Shown: in pieces, positions 1-59,850 of the stretch
Layout: each line of letters opens with the position of its first letter
How positions within the stretch are numbered: position 1 is the stretch's first letter
Source of the DNA: Calcarisporiella thermophila CBS 279.70
Lineage: Eukaryota; Fungi; Calcarisporiellomycota
Direction of reading: 5' to 3'
Assembly: GCF_041956535.1 (NCBI RefSeq)
Contig: NW_027192205.1
Location: forward strand, 665,936-729,935
Length of the DNA stretch: 64,000 bases
Made by a program: the position numbers and the translations under genes
The notes under the pieces: model-generated
What the model saw: the letters and a program-made list of their open reading frames with translations, nothing else
Databases searched by the model: none
What the model was told of the DNA's origin: nothing

Positions 1-16
1 CTCCGGCACCCGACTA

Positions 17-1339
17 TGTGGACGGCAAATTAGATCTCACCCAGAAATTCAACATTGAAGAAACGCTCTCTCTCCCCATAAACAACAACTCATATCTCAC
101 AATGGGTGGATGTCCTTTAAAATCGAAGGGCGAAAGTGAAGGACTGGTCAAACTAGGTGACTTCTTTAAACTCAACCGAAGGACTAATACATACAAACCG
201 ATGGTAGAACCAGAAGTACATGAATACGTGGCGAAAAATTCCGACCAATATTCCAGCCGATTTAGAGACAGCTACATAGTTCTTCAGTGGCACTAGAGGA
301 AACGAGAGATCCAACTGAATCCACAACTGGCTGATGCCCTGTTACAGAGTATACCACAGATTGAAGGACCATGTACGTTCCCGCTGGGTAAATGTGTGCT
401 AGCTGGCACAAAGATCAAGAACTTCCGTACAAAAATCGGGAGGCTCTACAAGACAAGCAAAGGAGAGAATATCACTCCGGAATGGAAAGAGACCTCAAGC
501 GATTCCATCAATTGGGAGGTAGCTTGGATGTACTGGAAAAAGCGGCCGAGCGAACCCAAGCATAGGACACTAAGATGGAGACTCTTGAAACACAGATTGG
601 TGACAAACATCATCACTAGTAAGTGGACAGGAGAATCTAATATTTGCAAGCGATGCAGAACCAACGCAGTGGAAACCATTAGCCATGCCTACCTGGAATG
701 CCCGGCCATAAATCAGTTATGGCAAACGGTAGACAACTTCGTGTGCCGCATTCTGGGAGTGAGAGCCCACGAGTCAACCAAGGAAGACAGACTATTTGGA
801 ACAGACTACAAAACCATGGGCTACCAACGGGAAGTAGTGTCAACGGTCCATGATGCAGCAATTTGGATCATCTATCGATCAAGATTATCGATAATAATGG
901 ATAACGCCCAACCAAGTGAAATAGCGCTCGCTGAACAACTAGGTCACGAAATGCAAAAAATCGTGAGATCCAAATGGTGGTCAGCGTCCATAAAGGATAA
1001 GAAAGAAGATTTCCAAGAGCTTTGGTGTAAGGGAAGTTGGATACAAGTCCAAGGAGACGAAATATCCTTCAACCAAAACACTTAGCTCCAATACGACCTT
1101 GCCGAATACCCTACCACCCGCATTCTAGTTTTCCTTTTTTTTTCTTTCTATATTAGTCCGTATTCTTTTCCTCTCTTGTATAATACCGTCCTTGAAAAAT
1201 AGGATGGTATTCATACGATCAACCACTACTTACATGTATTTCTCTTGACAATTTTTTTTTTGAGAGTATTTCTCCTGACAAGGTATTATACTAACTTAAA
1301 AGGATACTTTTCAATAAAGATCCATAAATCCCAAAAAAA
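17..1339 (+). mobile_element. 5'-truncated non-LTR (L1/Tx1-like) retrotransposon, family A copy 1
   Basis: Encodes an ORF2 C-terminus with the zf-RVT-type CCHC motif CKRC...ETISHAYLEC. The 3' UTR has AATAAA (1313-1318) and an A7 tail (1333-1339). A perfect 12-bp TSD GGCACCCGACTA lies at 5-16 and 1340-1351. Confidence 0.92.
18..1085 (+). pseudogene. Retrotransposon ORF2 C-terminal fragment (zf-RVT region), disrupted
   Basis: ORFs 18-296 and 396-1085 are in the same frame, separated only by one in-frame TAG at 294-296. No RT core is present (5' truncation). Confidence 0.85.
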
Positions 1340-1811
1340 GGCACCCGACTACGACGCAAGTGCAGCCACAAACAAGTATTAAGATTATATTAATTAGAAT
1401 TCCCGTTATTAGTTTATTTCATTGGTCATGCTTCACCCTATATAAAGGGATACTCTGAGAATATTGTAACAGTAGAATAATCATCCCCGGAGTACTATGA
1501 ATATATTCCTCTTCCTTGGTTTTCTGTAATAAATCCTCTATTCCCTTACCCCTGTCCCAATTATCCTAGATTATCTCTACCGAATTTATGTCATTAGTGT
1601 TTTGTGGAATTAGGGATTCGTGGTGAGAACAGTAAGCTCGCGTTCGAGTCCGAGGACGGAAAAGAAAAAAAAACTAATACTTTATTCTCCTTCCCTTTTT
1701 TTTTTGTGTGTTGGGAAAGATTCCTTATATATGAATGAAAAAAATAAGATAAAAACAATAAAGAATATTCATGTGGCCGCAATTTAAGCACTTAGTTGCA
1801 TTCGTTAAAAG

Positions 1812-1927: not shown

Positions 1928-2023
1928 AAAACTACCACACTTCACAACATTAGTATGTTTCATTTATTTATTTTTTAAATATTAAAAATAACAAACCGTT
2001 ACTTCCGCATACAACGAATTTTT

Positions 2024-2321
2024 AGAGCGGCTCTAGAACTGGACTGCCGCAGTAGCCCCTACTACTAGCCCTTCTCTTTCTTAATATCTCCCTTTCCATA
2101 TCACCTATCAAGTCGTTCCCTAATACCCACAGTTAGTTGAGTTTTATTTCTCATCTACCCATTTGAGGAGAAAATTTGTCATGATCAACTTACCCCGAAT
2201 TGCAATATCGCGTTAATTTCTAGCTTTTATCTCATTTTATTACTTTTAATAATGTAACGATTGTATTGTATCAAAAGCGAGTCTTATTAAACAATAAAGA
2301 CTCACTTTTGATCAAAAAAAA
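2024..2321 (+). mobile_element. 5'-truncated non-LTR retroelement (3' UTR only), family B copy 1
   Basis: Perfect 15-bp TSD ATACAACGAATTTTT at 2009-2023 and 2322-2336; AATAAA and A tail (2314-2321). The last ~75 nt recur at 28699-28767. Confidence 0.88.
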
Positions 2322-3830
2322 ATACAACGAATTTTTTTAACCAAAGAGGGGGTCGACTAGGCAAGCACGAGGAAGGCGAGAAATCGTACTACTTCAAAAT
2401 AAGTGGTGCATTTCATATATTGAATCGGTGAACTTCATTTAGGAAGGTTCCAGACATCAGATTGAAATCAAAATTATATGGGCCCTTTGATTTATTTCCT
2501 CTTACTCTTTTTTTTTTGTATTTCTTAAGGCTTTTGTTTTGTTCTTACGTAGTAAAAGTCTATAAATTTTAATGTCAATTCGCTTGGCATAATTTTTATA
2601 GATCAATTTCAAAAGCAAGTGGATTGGAAATGAGTAACGTATATTTTTTTACCAAATAATTATCTTCGAATTTGTTTTTCGATGTTGATTCAGATTTATT
2701 CGCTATATTATGTCGTATCGATTACACTTTTTTTCAAAATCAGAGCAGAATTGATAGAGTCTAAATACTGACAAAGCTTATAATATAACAGGCGTTACGG
2801 GATTAATCTCAGATGGCATGATATCTATGTCAACGTTTACACCGAACTCTTCGCATTAAGTTTGTGAATATTATATTGATTTTTTATTTTGACACCGCTT
2901 TTCAGTAATCGATGTTAATTTTAATTTTTTCGCCAGTCTATTGTAATTTTTTTAATTCTTTAATGAACTGTTAATTTTATCTAAAAAAAAACTAAAGGCG
3001 ATTGAAGGGTTAATGTTTTACCTATTGGCCAATACAAGTGCCTCTTATATCATAAGTTGACTTCTGTTGAGTTTCGTGATGTTGAATAGGCACTTTTCTC
3101 CGGTACTCAGTCACGGCATGAAAAAAATATTCAATTCCACCTTTGGTAGAATATAATCACTTGGCGGTAAACTTGGCATGCAAGGTTATGCCTTGCGAAA
3201 TGGACTTGTAACAAGTGGTTCCAATAAAAAAGCTCCCGGTAAGGATCCCCGAGCGGAACCGGGCTATTAACTCTCAAAAGCTCTTAATCAAATAAGCTAT
3301 TAAATTATCAACACGAGGCATTCTTTAAAATCGATACGAATGCATCCAATCAATCTTTTTACAACTAAAAACTCAGCTTATCGTGGGTTTCACTATAATA
3401 GCTGAAATACTGAGACGCAGCGCTATGAAAAATGGCCGGAAAATTAAAGGGCAAAGCTCGAGTAATGGGATATGACTAACTATCCAGGACGATATGTTGT
3501 AGGCCGATCAACCGCATTTCCTCAGACCACTCAAATCGGGTTGAGCAATTGTTTCTCCCTCAATCAGAGCCTGCATTTTCTAACTTAATTACCCGTTGGA
3601 TGAAAAAAGTGAGACATGAGCCAGGAGATAAGCGGGACCTTATTTTTTTTTTTCTAAAAATAACTAAGGAGAATTAAATTGGGATATTTTTCCTTAGGTT
3701 TATAATCCTTGAACCGTCGACATTTCCACGATTGCCTCTAATATTTTCTGGACTCATCTATTCCGCTGTTTCTTCGTCCACATCTGTATATAACGTTGCA
3801 TATACTCTCTTCTATATATCTGTATCTGTG

Positions 3831-27514: not shown

Positions 27515-28523
27515 GGTGGAAGGGCGGCGATGGGATGGGAGCTTGACAGAGGCTGAGGCTGAGCTCGCGCGGCTATGGGCGTTGGGGTATAGGGCGGATG
27601 GGAAGAGACTGGAAGGTAGAGGCCAGCACCCGAGGGGAAGAACAAGAGAGGGGGCAGCGCTAAGGAGCAAAGGAATATAATGGCGGAGGAGTTTGAACGC
27701 CCGGGCATTTGGAGCGGATCTAATTTTTGAGATGAAGTGGCCGTGATTGGTGACAGTGACATGCACTTGAGGAGCGGAATTTCTTCAGCACAGATGCCAC
27801 ACACCGGGCAGATCCACCAAAAAAAGCTCTGCGCATTCTGCGCTCCCCTCTGCTGCGCGCGGAAAAATCTCGCGAGCGCGGCGCAGCCATGGATGAATGC
27901 CGCGCAGCGCACTCTCGAAAACAAAGACGTGCCCTCCCCTCATGAGGGCGAGCCGCGCGTGCGTGGGAGGGATGCTTCAGGAAGAGTGCCGTCATAGTGC
28001 TTTGCAAATAACGAAAATAAACGACTGAAATCCTTGGGTTGCCATTTGAGTAAGGAAAAACTATGGAACACACGTCCTAAGCGGTGCAACCATCAGACAG
28101 CAACCCTATTCGAAAAAGAAAAAGGGAAAATGACTAAAATAAGACTTAGTAGGAAGCGCAAGAGCCGAACCGAGAACCATACACCATGGGGGACAGGGAC
28201 TAGAGGGCTTCGCACATGCCTCCAGTACCAAGCCGAGGGAAGTATCTTGACACTATAGCACTAGTCATATGGCAACTAAGCCAACAAAAACTGCCCTAAT
28301 TAGCCCTAAGAAAAAAAACTCGCAAAGCGGAATATTAGCGGCAAACTTTAGGCCGGTTAACCAGGAAAAAAAAATTGCTATACAGCATTTTAGGATGTAG
28401 TAATACACCGGACAAATACAAGCGGCAGAATATATTGGCTTACCTAAGTGAGGAATAGAGATGATCCTGGTAAACCAAAAAAAAAACATCGGGTACACAG
28501 TGAACTAAAAAGTTGAAAAGATC

Positions 28524-28596
28524 TGCTTCGACTGAGAATCGAACTCAGGACCTTCTGCTTACTAGGCAGACGCTCTGCCAGCTGAGCCATCGAAGC
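28524..28596 (-). tRNA. tRNA-Thr(AGT)
   Basis: GCTTCGA/TCGAAGC acceptor stem, TGGCTCAGCTGG A box, TCTGC-CT-AGT-AA-GCAGA anticodon arm, GTTCGATTC B box, T-runs downstream; 73 nt, no intron. Confidence 0.97.
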
Positions 28597-28693
28597 AATT
28601 TTTCTGGTCGTTTTCACGGACGGTGAGCTTCACTGATTTTATTTAAATAAATATATTTTAATATTTTGAGGATTTTTTTTTTCCCGCAATTGC

Positions 28694-28767
28694 AATAATT
28701 TTAATAATGTAACGATTATATTTTAGAGTCTTATCAAACAATAAAGACTCACTTTTGATCAAAAAAA
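28694..28767 (+). mobile_element. Severely 5'-truncated non-LTR retroelement, family B copy 2
   Basis: 28699-28767 matches 2244-2321 including the AATAAAGACTCACTTTTGATC-An end; flanked by TTTCCCGCAATTGC (28680-28693) and TTTTCCGCAATAGC (28769-28782). Confidence 0.8.
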
Positions 28768-28782
28768 TTTTTCCGCAATAGC

Positions 28783-29282
28783 AAAAAAAAAAAAATAAAA
28801 TATTGAAATTTAGTGATTTCGATTTTTGAAAAAAATGAATTACGCCCAAGCTCTCCAAAATGGAATCAACCATCGACAGCGCCCCTCCTTCGACCCGCCG
28901 ATCAAGAGGGCATACTCGGTGAAGAACGCAGTTATCTTCAACTTCACCGGAATCGCCAATCGCGAAGATGGTTTTGCCGCGGTCGCCGACAAATTCGGTG
29001 ACGCAATCATCGCTGTGGACGAAAATCTCCGGCGCGACATCGTGGAGATGGCGATCCAATTTAAAAAGGGTTTTGACTACCACGCTATTGTCGAGGAAGG
29101 TTTCGTGATTGGGGACAAGATTGTCCCCACACACCTGCTGTAAATTGTCAAAATCTAAGTTCCACCTTGCCACCTAACTATATCCCCACCCCTTTATTCC
29201 CCCTTTCTTTTTTCACTGTAATCATTAAACTCTTGTAAGCTACGGAAACTAATAAAAGTCTCCGTTGATTGATCAAAAAAAA
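28783..29282 (+). mobile_element. Short, probably internally deleted non-autonomous non-LTR element, family C
   Basis: A-rich leader, ORF1-like frame, pyrimidine-rich 3' UTR, AATAAA in a hairpin, TGATC-A8 end; flanked by TTTTCCGCAATAGC and TTTCCCGTAATAGC. Confidence 0.75.
28835..29143 (+). CDS. Truncated retrotransposon ORF1 (gag-like) N-terminal fragment, 102 aa
   Basis: Starts MNYAQAL (L1/Tx1 ORF1-type start); alternating beta/alpha pattern compatible with an RRM; lies inside a TSD-flanked element. Confidence 0.5.
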   Translation: MNYAQALQNGINHRQRPSFDPPIKRAYSVKNAVIFNFTGIANREDGFAAVADKFGDAIIAVDENLRRDIVEMAIQFKKGFDYHAIVEEGFVIGDKIVPTHLL

Positions 29283-29299
29283 TTTCCCGTAATAGCTTC

Positions 29300-29598
29300 T
29301 TCCAAGAGCTTTGGTATAAGGGAAGTTGGATACAAGTCCAAGGAGACGAAATATCCTTCAACCAATATACATAGCTCCAATACGACTATGCCGAATACCC
29401 TATCACTCATATTCCAAGTTTCCTTTTCTTATTTTCTTTTCCTTCCTTCTCTCGTATACCACCTTCCTTGGAAAATAGGATGGTATTCACCCTCTCTACC
29501 ATTTCTTACATGGATTTCTTGTTTCTGATGACTATCGAGTCCCTTTATTAAGAAACGAAAAAGGATACTTTTTAATAAAGATCCTCCTAACAAAAAAA
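29300..29598 (+). mobile_element. 5'-truncated non-LTR retrotransposon, family A copy 2
   Basis: Aligns to 1011-1339 (TTCCAAGAGCTTTGGT.TAAGGGAAGTTGGATACAAGTCCAAGGAGACGAAATATCC...); A7 tail 29592-29598; degenerate TSD CCGTAATAGCTTCTT / CTGCAATAGCTTCTT. Confidence 0.9.
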
Positions 29599-30465
29599 CT
29601 GCAATAGCTTCTTATGATGCCTTGCTCCTAATAATACTTAACTCTTCTTTAAAGCTTCATAGTAACATTAAGACACGTTAGCTATATTGTAATTAAAGTC
29701 TAAAGACGACTCAAGTGCACTTGGAATCCATTTTCTGTATCTCTTAATTGTTCTCACCTTCACTTGCTGCTTTGCTGAAGTAACTGGACAAGATGTCGGT
29801 ATGGGACGGTTATATTTAAGTTCGTGAAGGGCTGAAGCGGTGTATATAAGGTATGTAAACAGAAGTTTGCTCTTGCACTTTGCTCACGGATTAGTTTGGA
29901 CGTTGCAGCTAAAATGGGAGTAAGTGTAAGTGGTCACCCTTATAACACACTCGTCAAGCTATCCATTGAACATATATATTTATCACTTTATTTATGGGAA
30001 ATTTCTCAATAGCCTCTTCGTACACTCAAACTTTTAATAAAAAGGCTCGCTTACAGGCTAGGTGTCTGGAGAGTAAATGTTGAATTTATAGTGATAAATG
30101 ATGCTATCAATTCTTCTCACTCTAACCCAGTCTTTAAACAGAGGGCCGCATTAGGGAACGACCTCTAACGGTTTAGCTAACCATCCAATTCTGGGGTATA
30201 TTTGTTGCACCCTGTTCTTCTTTTGTTCAGTATAGGTCGACTTCTCATACGATCCAAAACTTGAAGTCATGAGCAACAAAGGCGACCACAGTTACATATG
30301 ACTTCAAGAGTGAATTACAGTTGGGTTTGAAAAATCCCGCTGTTTGGGGAAAAAATGGAGTGGATAGGAGGATAAACAGCCAGATAACCTCACTACCGAA
30401 GCAAAGATAGCCACAATAGTACATTTATTTATCATGAAGGAAGGGGTATAGCATCGATATTTATC

Positions 30466-50512: not shown

Positions 50513-51865
50513 TCACTTTAAAATGTATTTCGAAAACTCCTCGTCCTCTTCGAGCCTTTTTAAAGCTGTCGGGTTTAATGATATAAGAACATTCCACTCA
50601 CCCTCTGTCCAATGTGGAGGAGATGGCAAGATAATAAGTCTTCCTTCAATAGACCATGGTGGAAGCATTGCTCGCAGTGGTGAACCATAACCAAAATCAG
50701 CTTCATATACGGCAAATTTCGTCCAGCTACTATTCACTACTTCATTGCGTTGATTTATATTTATCGTCACCTTTGATTTATCTGGCTGCTTATCTATCCA
50801 TTCTAGGTTCTGACGCAAATATTCATTGTTGATTTGAATAAGTGAAGAGCGAATAGATTGGGCAACCAAACTCATTTGTTCTTCGTTAGATACTAATTCT
50901 GCTGGAAGTCTTGTAAGCTTACAAATAACCAATGACCCAAATGTATTAGCTGGCAGTGGGGGATCGAATTTGGCTCGGGTATCCACTGAAATTCCGCAGA
51001 TAACTTCTCGATCACCACCAATATTACGTGCTCGTGTAATTGCGCTCCAAGCATGGGCGACGAAAGCATCGTGGGTGGAAATACGCATCTCTTTGTCTTT
51101 GTTTTTACTCAAGACTGCATCTTTGAGTTTAGTCAATGCTTCTTTAGTAACTACAAAGCTCCGCACTTTGATATTCGGTGGGGGTGGGGGTGGTGCATTC
51201 CTATTGGAGGTCGCTATGAGTTTTGTATCAAGTGTTAAGTCTGGGGGATCGTCGAAAAACTTGAGATTTTCCTTGTTTGCAATACTACTGCGATCCCATG
51301 CCATTTTTTCAAACTCCGCGCCACGTGCGATGCGTCCCCAAGTGTTAACGAAATACGAAAGTGAGGAAAAATCGGCAATACTATGATGCATACTAATACC
51401 TAATGCTACAGATCCGCAAGGATAGCGAGTAAGGCGAGCAGCAAAGAGTATAGGCGAAGTTTTTTGTGCATAGGCAGACGTTGAAAACAGCTCTGTTTCT
51501 ACTTGATCCGGTTGGAAAACATCAGAGCCCGCGTCAGGAAAATTTGAAGTTGTTTGTGCAACAGAAAAATGTGCCCCCGGCATTGAGCCTCTTTCAAAAG
51601 AAACTTCCAAGCTCATGTCTTCAGCTTTGCGAAGACAGCCGCACACAATGGGAATAGCGTCGACAGTCAGTTTAAGTGATTCAAGTAAACAGGTATGAGG
51701 CATAAACGTTTCTTTTGAACTTAGTTCTGGCGGCTTCTTAAAATAATACACAACTCGAGTATATACTGGAGGCATCATATTCTCGAATCCAGAGAGCCGT
51801 AGAGGCTTGGCTGGTAGTATTGCATTGAGAGAAGGTTGGATGCAGAAGTTATCGAGAATATCCAT
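50513..51865 (-). CDS. CoA-dependent acyltransferase (BAHD/Tri101-like transferase family)
   Basis: HXXXD motif HSIAD and DFGYG motif; intronless, 450 aa. Confidence 0.92.
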   Translation of the reverse strand: MDILDNFCIQPSLNAILPAKPLRLSGFENMMPPVYTRVVYYFKKPPELSSKETFMPHTCLLESLKLTVDAIPIVCGCLRKAEDMSLEVSFERGSMPGAHFSVAQTTSNFPDAGSDVFQPDQVETELFSTSAYAQKTSPILFAARLTRYPCGSVALGISMHHSIADFSSLSYFVNTWGRIARGAEFEKMAWDRSSIANKENLKFFDDPPDLTLDTKLIATSNRNAPPPPPPNIKVRSFVVTKEALTKLKDAVLSKNKDKEMRISTHDAFVAHAWSAITRARNIGGDREVICGISVDTRAKFDPPLPANTFGSLVICKLTRLPAELVSNEEQMSLVAQSIRSSLIQINNEYLRQNLEWIDKQPDKSKVTININQRNEVVNSSWTKFAVYEADFGYGSPLRAMLPPWSIEGRLIILPSPPHWTEGEWNVLISLNPTALKRLEEDEEFSKYILK

Positions 51866-53212
51866 TTTCGCAGAAAATGCACAATGTGTTGTTGTGAAGC
51901 AATCTTCCTAAGAAAGTCTTCATATAATCAGACATGCGACGCTTCTCATTATTCTTTCTATTTATAACCTCTCTCCCCCCCCCCCCAAAGCTTGCCAACT
52001 TCATTCTCGCCACCGTTTGCCTTGCATGTGGGAAAAATAATCCAGATTCTTGCATAAGCATGGCGATCGTGATAATTAATAGTCTCCGCGATTTCGTTTC
52101 ATCCCCGTAAATCTACTAAGTAAAAAGTTAAATTTGCCACAAAAGAAGCCGGGGATTCCATCCCACTCTCTTGGCGGTCTCCTGTAGATTCCCTAACTAC
52201 CATTTTTTCGAAGCTTTATGTACATAATTTTCATACACAGGGGGTTGTATTTTTGGGAGAAATTCCTGGCATAGGATAGAGGTTCGGGAGCACCGGTTGG
52301 TAACCTCAAAGAAAATAGGTTCAATATGCTAACGAGCAAAACCTTTCTCCCTTTGAAGTTTCCTCCTTCTTTCAAACGCTGTTGCAAACTTTTCTAACCT
52401 ATTTTATAAAGTGCTAAGGGGTTTAAGAGCGGATAAAAACGCCGCTAGCACAACTAAGAATGTTATAGGGTTTCGAGCATGACTTATGGAGTGTATTATG
52501 GTAAGTGTCAGGTTATGCAATAATACAATTGTTAAATTGGATATCGAGGTAAATGTTAGGTTAAGTACTGGTATATTATTAGGGGAAGATTTAGGTTAGG
52601 TTAGAAAAAAAGAAAAACCTACTAGAGGAAGGGAAAGTTTTGATGGTGGTTTTTAGAAAGATAGTACAGGTGATTGTGTATCGATTGCACTAAAAATGAG
52701 AGCTCTAGGATGGATATTCGCAGAGTTATAAGCCCTCAAAGTTTTTGCTATAATACTAGAGATTTATATCTACAATGTAAATAGTGTAGTCATCATAAAT
52801 TTCATAATTCATATTTCTAAAACTGCGATTCTGTCTGATTTTTGTGGAAACTCTCTTAGGCTATTAACAATTCAACCCCCCAAAACCCCTTATGAACAAA
52901 ATGCTACTTCAACCTTAATTCACTAACCTACAATAGATGTCCCAACTATAAGATTTAGATGATAATATGATAAGATGCATTTGCTTCGATAATACATTTA
53001 TAATAATCAATAATTTGTGTATCTTCTTTATTTTAAGCATATGTATGTTGTCAAGTAGCAGCCAGGACACCAGAACGTGATATTAAGAGTGGCGGAGGTT
53101 TGTCTCCTGATTTATTTTATGGCTTGTGTTATAATGCCACATTGCCACATTATTTGCGAGGTTGAAAACAAAATGCGATATTAAATGAGTATACTCTCAC
53201 AACCCCATTAAG

Positions 53213-54499
53213 ATGGAATCTCAAAGAAATATTAGCCAGTATCATTCCAATGAAACAGCGCATAATGGAGAATCGCGAAGCCTCATTCCGAAAACTAATC
53301 GATTGAGCTCACTTTATTTTGTGCTGGCCTTTGGTGTAGTCAGCATGCTCTCTGACATTGTCTACGAGGGAGCACGTGCTATTACGGGTCCTTTTCTTGC
53401 GAAATTGGGGGCTAGTGGAGCGCTTGTTGGGATAATCACCGGTACAGGTGAAGCGGTAGCGCTTGTTCTACGTCTTTTCATAGGACGTTTATCGGATCGA
53501 ACTCGTAAGTATTGGACCCTCACCATTGCAGGATACGCAATCACAATTGTGTCTGTGCCGCTTCTCTCGGTGGCAAACACATTGTGGCAAGCCGTAATTC
53601 TTGTGATTGCCGAGCGATTTGGTAAAGCGGTACGTGCTCCTGCTCGGGACACAATGCTTGCTCATGCCGGAAGCCATCTTGGACTTGGGCGGGCATTTGC
53701 ATTTCACGAGGCTCTCGATGAATCGGGTGCACTCATTGGCCCATTGATTGTCGCAGGTATGATCGCTCTCTCCGGTTATAAATTGGCATTTGCAATTCTT
53801 GCTATACCAGGAATACTTGCGTTAATGATGCTGGCTTGGATTCGTAATGTGGTGCCTAATCCTTCTGCGTACGAGCATGAGCATGATACTCTTGAACATG
53901 ACCAACATCAACCATCTGACCCCCCATCATCGGCGACTTATTTTGTGTTCTCGAGTACATACTGGATCTATAGCTTGTTCACTGCGTTTTCCATGGCAGG
54001 TTTTGCCACATTTGGTCTTCTTTCTTTTCACTTAGAGACAAAAAGAGTTGTTGAACCTGTGCTAATTCCAGTGATATACTCCACGGTGATGGGAACCGCT
54101 GGTCTTTCTGCACTCTGTTCGGGTCGTCTCTATGACCGAATTGGAATGAGTGTGCTTGTGATTGCGCCATTACTTGGAATTGCAGCGCCGTTTTTATTTT
54201 TCGCTACTAACCCGACTCAAGCCTGGTTGGGCAATCTTTTATGGGGGGCCGCTACGGGTATTCACGGCTCAACCATGCGAGCTGCCGTCGCTGGCTTAGT
54301 CCCTTCTGTTTGTCGTGGCCAAGGATACGGTACTTTCACCGCGGTGTATGGGTTGGCGTGGCTAATGGGGGGATCCATCATTGGCATTCTATACGATCGT
54401 AATATCACCTGGGCGATTACATTCTCAGTGTCTCTCCAAGCTTTATCCTTTGTTGTACTTTCCTTTTTACTTGGCAGGCGTACAGACCATCGAACCTAA
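53213..54499 (+). CDS. MFS transporter, bacterial-type
   Basis: About 12 TM helices; GRLSDRTRK and GRLYDRIG motif A; ERFGKAVRAPARD; intronless. Confidence 0.92.
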   Translation: MESQRNISQYHSNETAHNGESRSLIPKTNRLSSLYFVLAFGVVSMLSDIVYEGARAITGPFLAKLGASGALVGIITGTGEAVALVLRLFIGRLSDRTRKYWTLTIAGYAITIVSVPLLSVANTLWQAVILVIAERFGKAVRAPARDTMLAHAGSHLGLGRAFAFHEALDESGALIGPLIVAGMIALSGYKLAFAILAIPGILALMMLAWIRNVVPNPSAYEHEHDTLEHDQHQPSDPPSSATYFVFSSTYWIYSLFTAFSMAGFATFGLLSFHLETKRVVEPVLIPVIYSTVMGTAGLSALCSGRLYDRIGMSVLVIAPLLGIAAPFLFFATNPTQAWLGNLLWGAATGIHGSTMRAAVAGLVPSVCRGQGYGTFTAVYGLAWLMGGSIIGILYDRNITWAITFSVSLQALSFVVLSFLLGRRTDHRT

Positions 54500-55743
54500 A
54501 ATCTACTCTAAGAGCATGCTAAAGCATAGAGAATGGAGCTTTGGCGCCTTATTTGTGATGGCTTCTTTATTTAAGTATTGAGTAGCCATGCAACTATCCC
54601 TTCTGCTCTACCATCACCCTCTACAAAATCACTTGAAAACCAATCCACTGCTTTTAATGAAAGTCAGACTTGTAGTTTCCAGTTCAGGGCGTGATAGAGG
54701 AGGAATATTTGCATTATGTAGATCTCCATGAAAATTCTCACTACACATCTAAATCCGAAGTTGATGATCTGGTGATGTTCTTTTAGTGTAACACTAGTGA
54801 TAGAAGCTTCACAGCCTACTTCTCTAATCTCATTTGCATATACGGATCTCAAACTTAGGTGAAAACTTTAGATTTTCACTTTAAATGCCGTCGATGAATT
54901 CAAAAACTCACATAAAAATTTAATTTTTTCTTTGGGAAAAAAGGTAATACTTATGAGCTAAATTGCAAATCTGAATACATTGAAAATTACATATGCAGAA
55001 ATGAAGTAAAGAAATACATTATATAGTATGTGATGCCTTTAATTTTTAATTGATGTGTTATAAAATAATAAACAATCCAGTCGAATTTCTATACTAATTG
55101 CATTTTCTAGAATGGCAGGTGATAACAGATTTGACTCGACAAATGAGCAGATAAGTAATCTCCCCAAAAACATAATAAGGAGTCGAATATCAATATATGG
55201 AATATTATTAAACGAAGAAATATTCTTCAAACACATGTATACGTGTAATTGCTAAAATAATACAAAAAATTACATATTAATTCTTACTTAAGCCTAGCGT
55301 ATGCGACGGCTTAAGGGAAATGGACAAGGCAAAGTCAGCAGTCTATTTTTTTTTATCTCCTTTAAAACTACTGTATATTTTGTAATTAAGTTTGAATTTG
55401 TGTGTTTACACTTATTAGTATCGACTACGGATATAATAAAAAAAACTCAAGGTTTGGACGTCACCTTAATGAATTTGAATTGCGTTTAGTTAAGGATCTT
55501 AAGGGCTTATTTCGAGCCACTATGCGCACCCGTATATAAAAGCAACTCCATTGATTTAGAATACAAATTTTGATAAAAAAATACCCAATAATGCGAGTTT
55601 GGATCGCATCAAACATATTAAACTCGAAAGATTCAACAAAATTTAAATATTCTCGTTTATTACTACGACAGTAGAACAAAGTTGTTCATTAAGTTGAGAA
55701 TATATTGAAAAATTCAATACGATATCCGCTCTTATAAATTAAA

Positions 55744-56007
55744 TTATTTTTTGCAGTATGAGTCTTTACCATCACCAACAATACAACCTTTTTTGCATAC
55801 TCCAAGATCCTTAGCAACTGCACCATAGCGGGAGCACTGGAAAATGTGGTCATTCAGATTGGTTCCACAACCCCCCTCGTAGGGAAGTTCAACTCCACAA
55901 TAGAGCCCTCGTCCTTGGCCCTTTTTACAATAACATTTGGCATCGGTGGAACCGATCAAGGCAAATACAGCGGAAGCAAGCGCAAAGGTATAAACAATAG
56001 CTTTCAT
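55744..56007 (-). CDS. Small secreted cationic cysteine-rich protein (87 aa)
   Basis: Signal MKAIVYTFALASAVFALIGSTDA; 8 Cys; Lys/Gly-rich; TATA (TATAAAAAGG on the minus strand) about 85 bp upstream. Confidence 0.8.
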   Translation of the reverse strand: MKAIVYTFALASAVFALIGSTDAKCYCKKGQGRGLYCGVELPYEGGCGTNLNDHIFQCSRYGAVAKDLGVCKKGCIVGDGKDSYCKK

Positions 56008-58119
56008 TTTAGATTGTCGATTGGTATGGTTATTAAGATATAGGATCGATATTCTTGGATTTACTGGTTATACCGGTAGAAAGTGGCCTTTTTATACCTT
56101 TGGTCTTTATTCAAAACTAGATTATACCTCGTTTAAAATAAAAAATAAGTTGGATGACTCAATACAAGAACCTAGACTTGAGTTTAGGGTAACATTTAAA
56201 CAATCAGTTTTCTATTCGGATTCATTTAAAGTGAAGTGACTTGTTACCATGATTCAGTAAAGAGATAAATTCGAACATACAAGTACCTTTTTGGTACATC
56301 CGTTGATATTAGAGTTGCCGTTGATGAACCTTCACTCATTTTTTGAATGCGAATCTGAAAACTATAATGGGTCATACCACTTTCCAAAGTGTATTTACAA
56401 GATGGCAAACCCACGCGCAAATATCCATGTTCTTTGGTGTGTTGATATAGTTACATAATGATTATATCAAAGGGTTGGCATTTACATTAGGTAATATTCT
56501 TTATCTCTCATTTAGTTTTTCAAAAGTAAATAACTAATTGAAAATCAAAGATTCGAAGCAAATAAGACTTTCATGCTCATCAAAACATAAACTATACTAT
56601 ACCATAAAAGTAAAAAAGTCTTATGGTCTCTGCATTTACTTCTCATGAAGTCAAATAAAGTATCCGAATATCATGTGTAGAGGTAACTCCCTACCTAATA
56701 AACTCTATTGTTTATACTTATATGCTAGTGACTAAGGTGTATATTTCTAATTAATAGCTTTTTGGGTATTTGAGTTTTAAAACGACTTGGTGTTAATAAA
56801 ATATTTTATAAAAAAGCACAATGGAGGGGCAATACTAATCAACTATGAATACCTGTGAGAGTAAGTAACTATATTTTACAATCCCAAAAAATATACATAC
56901 AATTAGAAAATACAATAGACAAGATCATATTTGGCGTGTCCATGGGACAATCCAAGAAATGTTTTGCCGAAGACTTGGGTGGAGATTTGAGAATAGTGGT
57001 GAGTCTAGTTACCCAATCTATATACGGTAATAAAAAGGACTGGTCACTTAACCCATCCCGCTCAAATGAACTTTATATTTCCTGTGAGTAATTATTTACC
57101 GATAATAAAATTCTCGACACTTGAGTCACTAATTGGAACTTTTATTCGTTAAGAGTATTTTTTTATTTATAATCTTTATATAATTTTCCGATTTTTGGAG
57201 TTTTGAGAGTCATGTACCCTTTACTATATTTATATTTTTTTCTTCTCGATATTTGCTCTACTATTGAGATGACCAGATTTGTCTTTACCCCAATAATATG
57301 TGTATTCAAGCAATTTATTCCCTTAGGACTATAGTTTCATTTAGGTAAATTTCAAAAAGCTTCAAAAAAAGAATAATATATTTCTGAAATAAACAATGAA
57401 GTGAAAGTGGAAATATGATAAGTAATATATTTGAGCTAAGCCATAGCTATCCTGAATTCAAGTAACATAAATGAATGACTGTTCTAAAAAATTTCTGTAA
57501 TTAGAAACTTTATACCGATCAAATCGGATTTGTGAATGGAAATAAAAATCAAATCAAATAATCCATGCAAATCACGATAGACTTAAGTCAAAAGTGAGCA
57601 AACTTGCTTCAATTTATTATAACCAATTACTATATATTATAATCTCAAAGAATAGGGCAAAATTCAAGGTTGAAGCATAGCAAGTTTTTAAGGAAATATG
57701 GCCTCTTGTAGTAGTTGTCTCTTTACAGCATTTAAATAATAATTCATTAAGAACCATTTTCCTAGATTCTTTATGAAAACTTCAGGTCATTTTTTAGGTC
57801 ACAAGATTGTAATATGATGTTGAGAATGAGCTGAGCATCTCAATAAAAAAACAGTCTAAATTTTGGGTCCGTGCCAAGGAGCATAATGGTCTTTTGTCAA
57901 TTTTTTACGGACTATTCTGCCGAGAATTCTTAGCAAGAAATCTAGAAATTTAAGTTGAAATTACTCGCAAGTGGCCAAATTACTCTATATGGTAACTCTT
58001 ACGAATATCCTTACGTCAAAACTACCTACTCTACTACGCCACTGATTGATTCGTATAAATATCGCCACTGTTTTTTCTATTCTCAGACAAACTGAATTAA
58101 GCGAAGTTAAAGGAAAACC

Positions 58120-59850
58120 ATGATAAAATACGTCGTTTTAGTTGTGTTTAGTCTCACCCTCTTACACACGGCCATAGCACGAAAATGCCTCTGCTTACCA
58201 AGTGATGACTGCTGGCCTAACCCTCAAGATTGGGCAAGCTTCAATGCATCCGTTGGAGGGCAACTTCTTATACCCACCCCGCCTGCACAGCCATGCCATT
58301 TGCCACACTATGACGAAGCTGCCTGCCATCAAGTGATGCAAAATTGGAACAATTCGTTCTGGCGAAGTGATCAAGTGGGTGCTATGCAGAATACTAACTG
58401 GGAAATGGATGGCGGTCAGGGGTGCCCTCTTGGAACGGATAAAAATGCGCCGTGTCTTCAAGGGTCGATACCAGCATATGCAGTCAACGTCAGCAGTATT
58501 TCTGATGTTCAGAAAACAATAAAATTTGCGACTGATCGAAAACTCCGCCTGGTGATCAAAAACTCAGGACATGATCATCTTGGCCGGAGTAGCGCACCGG
58601 GATCTCTTAGCCTTTGGACACATCATCTTAAAAACATCACGTTCCATGATAATTTCATGGCCGAAAATTGTGACTTGAGGGGAACGAGCCCTGCCGTTAC
58701 CGTGGGGGCTGGTGTTCATTGGGCGGAATTGTATCGGGAGGTCAAGAAACGAAACATCATAATTGTGGGTGGTTCGTCTGCCACCATTGGTGCCGCTGGT
58801 GGTTATGTTCAAGGGGGAGGACATAGCGCATTGTCACCTTTATATGGGTTGAGTGCTGATAACGTACTTGAGTTCAAAGTAGTTACTGCTGATGGTGAGC
58901 TGCGGACAGCCAATGCTTGCCAAAACAAAGATTTGTTTTGGGCCTTGCGGGGTGGTGGAGGCGGTACATTTGGAGTCGTTATATCCGCCACGCATAGGAC
59001 TTACAAGGAGCTTGATGGAGTTGTGGCGACATTTTACAGTATTGCCGCCAACAATTCTGATAGTAATCGGTTTATGGTGAAGGAGTTTATGAAGATACAC
59101 CCTTCTCTTTCGGATGCCGTGTTCTCTGGATATTTCTTCCTGTTCGACAAAAACCTGACTTTTGTTTATCTCTATCCAAGCGCCAATGAAACCCATGCTA
59201 ATATCACACTTGCTCCATTACTGACGTCTTTGCAGGGGCAGAAAGGATTAACTGTCATGGGGACTACACGTACTCTCCCTTCCTACATGAGTTGGCATCA
59301 ATTTATAAAATGTTCTGCTAATTCGCTCTGCACGGATCCTGTCGGTGATAATGCGATTATCGGATCAAGATTAATCCCAAGAGAGAACTTCGAAACGGAT
59401 CAAGGCTTGGATCAATTGACAGATGCCCTAATACAAGTCACGAAAGCTCCATTAACTGATCAGTGGATTCTTGGGATGTTTGTAGCGGGAGGGGCTGTTG
59501 CCCGTAACAACGGAAGCGAGACTTCAGTTAACCCGGCTTGGCGGAAGACGTTGGTTCATATGGAATTCACGACTACGTGGGCCAATAATGCGACTCAAGA
59601 GGAGATAAGTCGCCGTGCCGAAGCAGTAACACGCACTACTCAGCTACTCAAAGATATCACTCCTGGCTCTGGGGTTTATATCAATGAAGCGGACCCAAAT
59701 GACCCGGAGTGGCAACAGTCTTATTTTGGAGCAAATTATCCTCGTCTTAAAGCCATCAAAAGAACGATTGATCCACAAGGACTATTTAGGTGCCGAAAAT
59801 GCGTGGGAAGTGAAGATTGGACAGAGGATCTCAATTGCGAAAAGAGCTAA
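58120..59850 (+). CDS. Secreted FAD-linked oxidoreductase, berberine-bridge-enzyme/VAO family
   Basis: Signal peptide; CLPSDDCWP, KNSGHDHLGRS, GGYVQGGGH, DLFWALRGGGGGTFGVV, YINEAD...YFGANYPRL..IK...DP.GLF.C..CVGSE.W; intronless. Confidence 0.94.
   Translation: MIKYVVLVVFSLTLLHTAIARKCLCLPSDDCWPNPQDWASFNASVGGQLLIPTPPAQPCHLPHYDEAACHQVMQNWNNSFWRSDQVGAMQNTNWEMDGGQGCPLGTDKNAPCLQGSIPAYAVNVSSISDVQKTIKFATDRKLRLVIKNSGHDHLGRSSAPGSLSLWTHHLKNITFHDNFMAENCDLRGTSPAVTVGAGVHWAELYREVKKRNIIIVGGSSATIGAAGGYVQGGGHSALSPLYGLSADNVLEFKVVTADGELRTANACQNKDLFWALRGGGGGTFGVVISATHRTYKELDGVVATFYSIAANNSDSNRFMVKEFMKIHPSLSDAVFSGYFFLFDKNLTFVYLYPSANETHANITLAPLLTSLQGQKGLTVMGTTRTLPSYMSWHQFIKCSANSLCTDPVGDNAIIGSRLIPRENFETDQGLDQLTDALIQVTKAPLTDQWILGMFVAGGAVARNNGSETSVNPAWRKTLVHMEFTTTWANNATQEEISRRAEAVTRTTQLLKDITPGSGVYINEADPNDPEWQQSYFGANYPRLKAIKRTIDPQGLFRCRKCVGSEDWTEDLNCEKS

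What the first reader, a model, noticed from the sequence alone, without database searches (positions are those of the whole stretch)
28524..29613. Three different non-LTR retroelement families stacked at a fixed distance upstream of a tRNA gene: a probable tRNA-targeting retrotransposon system in a fungus
Seen: four copies of one target motif, TTTCCCGCAATTGC (28680-28693), TTTTCCGCAATAGC (28769-28782), TTTCCCGTAATAGCTTCTT (29283-29301) and CTGCAATAGCTTCTT (29599-29613), separate three poly(A)-tailed elements (B, C, A). All three are on + with their 5' ends facing the 5' end of the minus-strand tRNA-Thr (28596). Removing them collapses the locus to one empty site whose TSDs start 84-88 bp upstream of the tRNA. 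The same A and B families elsewhere in the window have unrelated TSDs (GGCACCCGACTA, ATACAACGAATTTTT), so the specificity looks positional rather than sequence-based. Established: Dictyostelium TRE5 non-LTR elements integrate head-to-head at a fixed distance upstream of tRNA genes via TFIIIB contacts, whereas the classic fungal tRNA targeters Ty1/Ty3 are LTR elements. Inference: an L1/Tx1-like clade here has evolved Pol III safe-harbour targeting, with each new insertion pushing older ones outward (A oldest, B youngest). I cannot confirm novelty without a literature or database search.
Basis: partly seen in the sequence, partly recalled or inferred. Interest (0 to 1): 0.92.

Follow-up and report, generated by a model that had tools for sequence, protein, structure and literature searches.

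The report
tRNA-targeted LINE/SINE stack in a fungus
Three dead fragments of L1-like jumping genes sit one behind another at the same spot about 80 bases in front of a tRNA gene. Across this fungal genome the same elements and a dependent SINE land in the same narrow window and orientation upstream of many tRNA genes, a behaviour so far described for non-LTR elements only in social amoebae.

Summary
A tRNA-Thr(AGT) lies at 28523-28597 (-). Four copies of one target-site duplication (TSD) separate three poly(A) elements on +, with their 5' ends facing the tRNA 5' end.

I read 310 kb of this genome, very probably Calcarisporiella thermophila. The proximal TSD copy starts 60-82 nt upstream of tRNAs of at least 13 anticodon types. 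Distal copies follow poly(A): 22 pairs upstream against 4 low-complexity pairs downstream. Repeated DNA begins 74-120 nt upstream of 23 tRNAs. TSD sequences are unrelated, so the rule is positional.

The elements have the L1-type layout: ORF1, then APE, RT and zf-RVT. "Three families" is really two deep lineages, A versus B/C. A 340-bp tRNA-derived SINE uses the same site. Element C is an internally deleted copy with an intact 5' end.

Targeting is not absolute: a B copy at 2024-2320 has no tRNA nearby. The TFIIIB contact is inferred, not tested. No paper describing a fungal non-LTR tRNA targeter was found.

At least eight other first-stage notes flagged the same phenomenon on other DNA of this genome.

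A solo LTR 8-12 nt upstream of several tRNAs shows a second, Ty3-like targeting system.

The parts
28523..28597 (-). tRNA-Thr(AGT) gene, the presumed landmark for integration
   Evidence: ARAGORN.
28598..28679 (.). Unique 82-nt 5' flank between the tRNA and the first TSD copy
   Evidence: No repeat coverage until 99 nt upstream of the tRNA. Sequence.
28680..28693 (+). TSD copy 1 (TTTCCCGCAATTGC), the copy nearest the tRNA
   Evidence: proximal copy at 82-98 nt, paired with a copy 89 nt further out that follows poly(A).
28694..28768 (+). Element B: the 75-nt 3' end of the B family (hairpin, AATAAA, A7). It is innermost, so youngest.
   Evidence: 40 scored genomic matches, best 96%. Aligns to the 3' end of the 297-bp B copy at 2024-2320. 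Hairpin z = -2.8.
28769..28782 (+). TSD copy 2 (TTTTCCGCAATAGC)
28783..29282 (+). Element C, an internally deleted LINE copy. It has a 53-nt A-rich leader (28783-28835) and ORF1 codons 1-102 (ATG at 28836, stop at 29143-29145). At about 29141 it is fused to a 142-nt 3' tail with poly(A).
   Evidence: Bases 50-359 match the ORF1 start of three LINE copies; bases 359-500 match more than 20 tails at 90-97%. The ORF1 homologue in L032 is followed by a CCHC ORF and then an APE domain. No other copy has this junction.
29283..29301 (+). TSD copy 3 (TTTCCCGTAATAGCTTCTT). It is the right copy for C and the left copy for A.
29302..29598 (+). Element A: the 297-nt 3' end of the A-lineage LINE. It is outermost, so oldest.
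   Evidence: 48 genomic matches, best 85%. Homologous to the 3' end of the 1.3-kb A copy at 17-1338, which encodes a zf-RVT ORF2 C-terminus.
29599..29613 (+). TSD copy 4 (CTGCAATAGCTTCTT), the outer end of the stack
5..1350 (+). Second A-lineage copy (17-1338, 5'-truncated, carries the ORF2 C-terminus with zf-RVT). It is flanked by the TSD GGCACCCGACTA (5-16 and 1339-1350). Whether a tRNA lies nearby cannot be told, because the 5' flank lies outside the window and is masked.
2009..2335 (+). Second B copy (2024-2320, 297 bp) flanked by the TSD ATACAACGAATTTTT. It is an off-target insertion: 670 nt of unique DNA lies 5' of it and holds no tRNA or other Rfam RNA.

Best explanation
The locus is a landing pad made by repeated target-primed reverse transcription at one position upstream of a tRNA gene.

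This fungus is very probably Calcarisporiella thermophila. It carries L1-superfamily LINEs with ORF1 followed by an ORF2 containing an apurinic-type endonuclease, a reverse transcriptase and a zf-RVT domain. These LINEs fall into at least two deep lineages, A and B/C. A roughly 340-bp tRNA-derived SINE borrows a C-like 3' tail.

All of them nick the DNA about 61-82 nt upstream of the mature 5' end of a tRNA gene and again about 15-20 nt further out. The result is a TSD of about 12-22 bp. The element always points its 5' end at the tRNA.

The site is measured from the tRNA. Each new insertion therefore reuses the tRNA-proximal TSD copy and pushes older elements outward. Here A inserted first, then C, then B.

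Shown: the position, the orientation, the reuse of the site, the independence from target sequence, the L1-type domain set, and the sharing of the site by both lineages and the SINE.

Inferred: the ribonucleoprotein is tethered by an element protein to the Pol III pre-initiation complex on the tRNA gene (TFIIIB/TFIIIC or Pol III itself). By analogy with TRE5-A the tethering protein would be ORF1p. The endonuclease would then cut wherever it is held, not at a preferred sequence.
For: 1. Exact anatomy of the stack.
2. Enrichment. In 3-kb loci centred on genomic copies, about 45% hold a tRNA. Head-to-head is the main arrangement: 9 of 21 for A, 16 of 21 for C, and 13 of 25 for B among copies with a tRNA in reach.
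3. Repeat onset. Repeated DNA starts 74-120 nt upstream of 23 tRNAs, and there is no such peak downstream.
4. TSD pairs. There are 22 pairs whose distal copy follows poly(A), upstream of 15 of 36 tRNAs. The proximal copy starts at 60-82 and ends at 77-98. Only 2 pairs are in the opposite orientation. The downstream control gives 4 low-complexity, scattered pairs.
5. Stacks. 26 TSD-resolved insertions chain back to 15 tRNAs, with stacks of up to 3-4 elements reusing one TSD.
6. Target sequence. The TSD sequences are unrelated to each other and the tRNAs cover at least 13 anticodons.
7. Distance rule. Where a solo LTR lies between the tRNA and its native flank, new LINE/SINE copies insert inside the LTR at the same distance from the tRNA. 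Older stacks sit 55-70 nt beyond the LTR end.
8. Shared site. A, B, C-tail and SINE insertions all use the same window, although the ORF2 C-termini of A and B/C are only 27-31% identical.
9. Domains. RVT_1 and zf-RVT are present in ORF fragments. The best solved relative is human L1 ORF2p, at 129 bits against 81 for R2. APE and RT lie in one 1372-codon frame upstream of a B tail, and an APE domain follows the C-type ORF1.
Against: - Only about 1% of the genome was read. The loci were chosen by similarity to these elements, and 10% of them read N.
- About half of the copies show no tRNA in the 1.5-kb flank.
- Of 26 insertion sites with no tRNA link but a readable 5' flank, 5 have wholly unique flanks without a tRNA, including B at window 2024-2320. 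Targeting is therefore leaky.
- No Pol III gene other than tRNAs was seen next to elements, so generality for Pol III genes is unproven.
- SINE heads inside stacks do not visibly attract opposite-strand insertions.
- There is no evidence of current activity: no runs could be listed, and the three elements here are dead fragments.
- No protein contact was tested.
Confidence: 0.82

Rival explanations
1. Integration is guided by local chromatin or DNA shape rather than by a protein tether to the Pol III machinery. The guide could be the edge of the positioned -1 nucleosome, or DNA bent by TFIIIB upstream of active tRNA genes. The outcome would be the same, a fixed distance and orientation, by a different mechanism.
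For: - The window (TSD about 61-98 nt upstream of the mature tRNA end) lies beyond the region TFIIIB is known to cover in yeast (established knowledge) and could coincide with a nucleosome border.
- Targeting is leaky.
- SINE heads in stacks are not obvious targets.
Against: - The strict strand orientation (22 pairs against 2) and the spread of about 20 nt are easier to explain by a directional protein contact.
- TRE5-A, the closest functional analogue, uses ORF1p-TFIIIB contacts (PMC5911963).
- Nothing here separates the two models.
Confidence: 0.12
2. The endonuclease recognises a nucleotide motif that happens to occur upstream of tRNA genes. This would be sequence-specific targeting, as in many Tx1-, R2- or R1-type elements.
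For: Some TSDs recur in different loci, for example GGCTTGGTTTTGGTGGC-like and TCGAGAG-containing ones.
Against: - The recurring TSDs are explained by a shared solo LTR, or by related flanks lying at the same distance from the tRNA.
- TSDs in native flanks share no motif, while their distance from the tRNA is constant.
- TSD starts are not A-rich, so not even the L1-type TTTT/A preference is visible.
Confidence: 0.03
3. Insertion is random. Selection then removes copies everywhere except in harmless tRNA-upstream DNA. Alternatively, the stack is a product of segmental duplication or misassembly.
For: The genome is compact and gene-dense. tRNA-upstream regions are classic safe havens.
Against: - Selection cannot produce a 20-nt window, a single orientation, or reuse of one TSD by successive elements.
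- The three stacked elements differ in sequence and are separated by TSD copies in the pattern expected from serial insertion, not from duplication.
- The same architecture recurs on many contigs.
Confidence: 0.03

Closest known systems
TRE5 (TRE5-A/B/C) non-LTR retrotransposons of Dictyostelium discoideum
   Same: - L1-group, APE-type, two-ORF non-LTR elements.
- Integrate upstream of tRNA genes irrespective of anticodon.
- The 5' end faces the tRNA.
- Targeting is positional rather than sequence-based.
- The site is reused.
   Different: - The host kingdom is Fungi, not Amoebozoa.
- The distance is greater: the TSD spans about 61-98 nt and the element 5' end lies 74-101 nt from the mature tRNA end, against 40-54 bp for TRE5 (PMC5911963).
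- The C-type element has practically no 5' UTR, whereas TRE5-A has its A/B-module 5' UTR.
- A tRNA-derived SINE partner is present.
- The ORF1-TFIIIB contact is untested here.
- Sequence kinship to TRE5 could not be tested because no TRE sequence was available to the tools.
NLTR-B (Polysphondylium pallidum) and NLTR-A (D. purpureum)
   Same: L1-group non-LTR elements found at fixed distances upstream of tRNA genes. They show that the trait arose more than once within one group (PMC5006619, PMC5911963).
   Different: The distances are 39-64 bp for NLTR-B and 2-6 bp for NLTR-A. Both occur only in dictyostelids.
Ty3 and Ty3-like LTR elements (S. cerevisiae Ty3, Yarrowia Tyl3/Ylt1/Tyl6, S. japonicus Tj1, Rhizopus Ty3-like)
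   Same: Fungal retroelements that use Pol III genes as safe havens. A solo LTR with TGTTG..CAACA ends and a 4-bp TSD lies 8-12 nt upstream of several tRNAs in this same genome.
   Different: They integrate by an integrase at or near the Pol III start site and have LTRs. The elements of this finding use target-primed reverse transcription about 70 nt upstream and end in poly(A).
Fungal L1-clade LINEs without known Pol III targeting (Zorro of Candida albicans, Ylli of Yarrowia lipolytica)
   Same: APE-type L1-like LINEs in fungi with many 5'-truncated poly(A) copies.
   Different: No tRNA association is described for either, and Ylli is reported to lack recognisable TSDs (PMC5014426). Here the TSDs are long and the position is fixed.

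Membership tests
L1-superfamily (APE-type) non-LTR retrotransposon | Reverse transcriptase of the LINE type, closest to L1 ORF2p | tested here: met
   RVT_1 hits at E = 5e-31 to 1e-21 in three ORF fragments from stacks. The best solved relatives are human L1 ORF2p (129 bits), against R2 (81 bits). The nearest library relative (46% identical) is a 1174-aa ORF2 with Exo_endo_phos, RVT_1 and zf-RVT.
L1-superfamily (APE-type) non-LTR retrotransposon | N-terminal apurinic/apyrimidinic-type endonuclease in ORF2 | tested here: met
   Exo_endo_phos and RVT_1 matches lie in the same 1372-codon open frame on C3, 2.5 kb upstream of a B-type tail. An APE match follows the C-type ORF1 on C32. This rests on coordinates only; the DNA could not be fetched.
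L1-superfamily (APE-type) non-LTR retrotransposon | C-terminal cysteine-rich zf-RVT domain, poly(A) tail, variable 5' truncation, TSDs | tested here: met
   zf-RVT (PF13966) is present in five ORF2 C-terminal fragments. Poly(A), TSDs of 12-22 nt and insert sizes of 148-1222 bp were seen.
   No named reference sequences were available. The top library hits are unnamed or come from a turtle, an alga and metagenomes.
tRNA-gene-targeted non-LTR retroelement (functional class of TRE5/NLTR) | Narrow integration window at a fixed distance upstream of tRNA genes of many anticodon types | tested here: met
   TSD proximal copies start at 60-82 nt (n = 22 pairs, 15 tRNAs). The downstream control is flat. 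At least 13 anticodons are represented.
tRNA-gene-targeted non-LTR retroelement (functional class of TRE5/NLTR) | Fixed orientation relative to the tRNA (5' end facing it) | tested here: met
   22 poly(A)-distal pairs against 2 opposite. Head-to-head is the dominant arrangement.
tRNA-gene-targeted non-LTR retroelement (functional class of TRE5/NLTR) | Targeting depends on the Pol III transcription complex (B box/TFIIIC, TFIIIB contact of ORF1p) | not testable with these tools
   The only indirect support is that the distance is kept when an LTR replaces the native flank.
TRE5 family proper (Dictyostelium) | Sequence kinship of ORF1/ORF2 and modular A/B/C UTR structure | not tested
   No TRE5 sequence was available. 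The C-type element starts 0-4 nt before its ORF1 ATG, unlike the long 5' UTR modules of TRE5-A (my own knowledge).

The most novel reading that the evidence does not exclude
An early-diverging, thermophilic fungus has evolved Pol III-directed target-primed reverse transcription independently of the dictyostelid TREs. The trait is shared by two LINE lineages whose ORF2 C-termini are only about 30% identical and by a dependent tRNA-derived SINE. It coexists at the same tRNA genes with a Ty3-like LTR element. At least one lineage has no 5' UTR of its own, so its transcription may depend on promoter activity in the tRNA-upstream flank. If so, the target site would be part of the element's life cycle and not only a safe harbour.
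Probability: 0.4. Interest if true: 0.88.

Novelty: new variant of a known kind. Interest (0 to 1): 0.78.

Why it matters
According to the reviews I could read, position-specific integration of non-LTR retrotransposons at Pol III genes is known only from social amoebae. In fungi the textbook tRNA targeters are LTR elements that use an integrase.

A fungal LINE/SINE system with a sharp, sequence-independent window would have several uses:
- It would be a second, probably convergent, natural experiment on how a TPRT machine is steered by a host transcription complex.
- It comes from a thermophile, whose proteins are often good for structural work.
- It offers two diverged LINE lineages for finding the shared targeting determinant.
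- It bears on the design of safe-harbour, LINE-based gene insertion tools.

The same loci also show how two unrelated retroelement classes partition the few tens of base pairs in front of a tRNA gene.

Tried and rejected
1. Fetching more genome. No full-length element, no TFIIIB genes and no unbiased set of tRNA flanks could be read, and I did not try another route.
2. Other Pol III genes. Rfam at gathering threshold found nothing on 40 loci without a tRNA. Only four 5S genes were found, none near a listed element.
3. A hidden Pol III gene. I first suspected that a roughly 350-bp repeat ('X'), with stacks starting 55-70 nt beyond its end, was a novel Pol III-transcribed gene or SINE acting as a target. 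Rfam and low-threshold ARAGORN gave nothing credible. Junction reading then showed it is the distal part of a solo LTR sitting next to the tRNA, so I rejected the idea.
4. Empty alleles or expression. The look-up of sequencing runs listed no run, and read laying was not used.
5. Naming the organism directly. The look-up of encoding contigs found no record for a window protein or for the closest RT fragment. The protein atlas gave no useful taxon.
6. The nearest named-source relative of the RT is on a 5.2-kb metagenome contig (L091). It shows no tRNA in its 458-nt 5' flank, and its ORF1 is unrelated to the C-type ORF1.
7. Downstream (TRE3-like) targeting. Some copies lie tail-to-tail with a tRNA, but there is no distance peak or TSD signal downstream.
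8. Complex prediction was not used, because no TFIIIB subunit sequence was in hand.
Full report
**The observation**

ARAGORN finds a single tRNA in the 64-kb window, tRNA-Thr(AGT) at 28523-28597 on the minus strand. On the plus strand, 83 nt upstream of its 5' end, lies the motif TTTCCCGCAATTGC (28680-28693). It recurs with one or two changes at 28769-28782, 29283-29301 and 29599-29613. Each recurrence comes immediately after an A-run.

The three enclosed segments are genuine dispersed repeats.
- A (29302-29598) has 48 scored matches in the genome, the best 85% identical.
- The last 142 nt of C (28783-29282) match more than 20 places at 90-97%. Its bases 50-359 match three places at 82-83%.
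- B (28694-28768) has 40 scored matches, the best 96%.

The nesting of the duplications is what serial insertion into the tRNA-proximal TSD copy predicts. The TSD of A is 19 nt; the TSDs of C and B use its first 14 nt. The divergence values agree with the order A first, then C, then B.

**What the elements are**

ORF fragments in the fetched loci carry RVT_1 and the zf-RVT domain. A reverse-transcriptase fragment from a stack is closest among solved structures to human L1 ORF2p, at 129 bits against 81 for R2. Its nearest relative in the 1.8-billion-protein library outside this genome is only 46% identical. That relative is a 1174-residue ORF2 with Exo_endo_phos, RVT_1 and zf-RVT.

In the genome itself an Exo_endo_phos match and an RVT_1 match share one 1372-codon open frame on contig C3, 2.5 kb upstream of a B-type tail.

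The 5' part of C is the start of a LINE ORF1. Its homologue on C32 continues into a CCHC-knuckle ORF and then an APE domain. C is therefore an internally deleted copy. It consists of a 53-nt A-rich leader, 102 codons of ORF1, and a direct junction to the 142-nt tail. No other copy has this junction.

The ORF2 C-termini that precede B-type and C-type tails are 69-76% identical. The A-type C-terminus is only 27-31% identical to either. The stack therefore holds two deep lineages, not three unrelated families.

All three tails share one design: a short hairpin with AAUAAA in or next to the loop, then about 10 nt, then poly(A).

**The genome-wide test**

The window is G000:C15:665936-729935. Ten per cent of their bases are withheld as N. 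Merged with the window they form 76 intervals totalling 310 kb.

About 45% of the 3-kb loci contain a tRNA, and head-to-head is the commonest arrangement. Seen from the tRNA side, repeated DNA begins 74-120 nt upstream of 23 tRNAs. Downstream there is no peak.

I then searched for 12-mers in the first 200 nt upstream that recur further out. This found 22 pairs whose distal copy directly follows poly(A), at 15 of 36 tRNAs.
- The proximal copy starts 60-82 nt from the tRNA and ends at 77-98 nt.
- Its length is 12-22 nt.
- Only two pairs had the opposite polarity.
- The same search downstream of 34 tRNAs gave four low-complexity pairs at scattered positions.

A generic search for 'A-run followed by a 13-mer that recurs upstream' gave 79 insertions. 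Of these, 26 chain back to 15 tRNAs, and the proximal TSD lies 61-82 nt out. Stacks of up to 3-4 insertions on one TSD occur at tRNA-Ile(AAT) and tRNA-Thr(TGT), and three distal copies at tRNA-Asp(GTC).

The TSD sequences have nothing in common, and the tRNAs cover at least 13 anticodons. A-lineage, B, C-tail and SINE insertions all use the same window. This locus, at 82-83 nt, lies at the far edge of the distribution.

**A SINE and an LTR explain the apparent exceptions**

The commonest first occupant of the site is a roughly 340-bp element. Its 5' end is tRNA-like, with A and B boxes and an RF00005 score of 20.5 bits, below threshold. Its 3' end resembles the C tail. It sits 79-101 nt upstream of at least 11 tRNAs. 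It is a tRNA-derived SINE mobilised by these LINEs.

Many insertions at first looked orphaned, with no tRNA nearby. Most have repeats right up to their TSD and so belong to stacks whose inner junctions my strict filter missed. In several loci, about 55-70 nt of unique DNA separates the TSD from the end of another repeat.

Reading the junctions shows that this repeat is the outer part of a 415-bp solo LTR. The LTR has TGTTG..CAACA ends and a 4-bp TSD (CGTG, CTCG). It is inserted 8-12 nt upstream of tRNA-Met (twice), tRNA-Leu(CAA) and tRNA-Gly(TCC).

Younger LINE/SINE copies lie inside the LTR at the usual distance from the tRNA. Older stacks lie beyond the LTR end, at the usual distance minus the few bases between the tRNA and the LTR. 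The distance rule therefore survives replacement of the native flank by foreign DNA. That is the strongest argument here for positional targeting rather than sequence targeting.

**Limits**

- Of 26 insertion sites with no tRNA link but a readable 5' flank, five have fully unique 5' flanks with no tRNA. One is the 297-bp B copy at window 2024-2320. Targeting is strong but not absolute.
- The A copy at window 17-1338 begins 12 nt after the window start. A tRNA at the expected place would lie outside the window, in DNA that reads N.
- About half of all copies had no tRNA within the 1.5-kb flank. This is expected for long elements and long stacks, but it could not be resolved.
- No other Pol III gene was found next to an element.
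- No sequencing run could be listed, so neither expression nor filled and empty alleles could be examined.

**Mechanism**

The geometry is shown. The polarity of TPRT implies that the first nick, on the strand that is the sense strand of the tRNA gene, lies at the tRNA-proximal edge of the TSD, about 61-82 nt upstream. The second nick lies 12-22 nt further out.

TSD starts are not A-rich. The endonuclease therefore appears to cut where it is held, not at an L1-like TTTT/A site.

A tether to the Pol III pre-initiation complex is inferred by analogy with TRE5-A, whose ORF1 protein contacts TFIIIB (PMC5911963). A chromatin-edge or DNA-shape model cannot be excluded.

One further observation may matter. 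In three other C-type copies the homology begins 0-4 nt before the ORF1 ATG, directly after the TSD, in one case after a run of extra G. This lineage therefore has essentially no 5' UTR and may rely on promoter activity in the flank.

**Host and literature**

A BBE-type oxidase in the window has its closest named relatives, evidently paralogues, in Calcarisporiella thermophila. One of them lies on a contig of 241,882 bp, which is exactly where contig C34 of this genome ends. The genome is therefore very probably C. thermophila (Calcarisporiellomycota), not a dikaryon.

The 2016 comparative study and the 2018 review of Pol III targeting list non-LTR tRNA targeters only in dictyostelids:
- TRE5, 40-54 bp upstream
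- NLTR-B, 39-64 bp upstream
- NLTR-A, 2-6 bp upstream
- TRE3, downstream

They name only LTR elements for fungi. Rhizopus Ty3-like elements co-localise with tRNA genes. Ylli of Yarrowia is not described as tRNA-associated.

Further full-text searches found no fungal case. The library covers open-access papers only, so an existing description cannot be excluded.

**Verdict**

The finding is real, and its interpretation is essentially right. It describes a new variant of a known kind of system: tRNA-gene-targeted non-LTR retrotransposition. It differs in host kingdom and in distance, it has a SINE partner, and it sits beside a Ty3-like LTR element.

The scan had already flagged the same phenomenon in at least eight other windows of this genome. 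My sample of other contigs tests the general claim those notes make.

Noticed in passing
L079/L009 region (G000:C40:39318-39732); also L044:614-1019, L084:297-368 and 878-1091, L087:942-1009: A 415-bp solo LTR with TGTTG..CAACA termini and a 4-bp TSD lies 8-12 nt upstream of tRNA-Met (twice), tRNA-Leu(CAA) and tRNA-Gly(TCC). This is a Ty3-like, start-site-proximal tRNA targeter in the same genome. LINE/SINE copies later inserted inside it.
   Followed up: partly
L038:2765-3105 (-), and at least 11 other loci (e.g. L059:764-1104, L040:555-894): A roughly 340-bp tRNA-derived SINE with A/B boxes in its head and a tail related to the C-type LINE tail. Copies are 90-96% identical. It is the most frequent first occupant of the site upstream of tRNAs. 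ARAGORN sometimes calls its head a tRNA.
   Followed up: partly
L033:1780-1830 (-), L032:1800-1830 (-), L034:1800-1830 (-); window 28783-28838: In C-type LINE copies the ORF1 ATG lies 0-4 nt from the 5' junction, in one case after a run of extra G. The element therefore has essentially no 5' UTR or internal promoter. The window copy instead carries a 53-nt A-rich leader of unknown origin, possibly a 5' transduction.
   Followed up: partly
window 2009-2335: A 297-bp B-family copy with a perfect 15-nt TSD lies in unique DNA, with no tRNA or other Rfam RNA within 670 nt on its 5' side. It is a clear off-target insertion.
   Followed up: yes
G000:C3:773405-777719 (-), not fetched: A 1372-codon open frame with APE and RT matches lies upstream of a B-type tail. 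It is a candidate intact, possibly active B-family LINE.
   Followed up: no
window 28712-28761, 29225-29274, 29542-29591: The tails of all three families end in a short hairpin that presents AAUAAA in or beside the loop, about 10 nt before the poly(A). Fold z-scores are -1.9 to -2.8. This is a possible shared 3' recognition signal that would let the SINE be mobilised.
   Followed up: partly
window 50513-59850: A BBE-type FAD oxidase, a BAHD-type acyltransferase and an MFS transporter lie side by side and look like a small secondary-metabolite cluster. The oxidase has many paralogues named from Calcarisporiella thermophila, which identifies the host.
   Followed up: partly
G000:C31:280129-280655: Only four 5S rRNA genes were scored in the genome. 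Two are in tandem 408 bp apart. Their flanks could not be read, so whether the LINEs also target 5S genes is open.
   Followed up: no
This limits tRNA detection next to long elements.
   Followed up: yes
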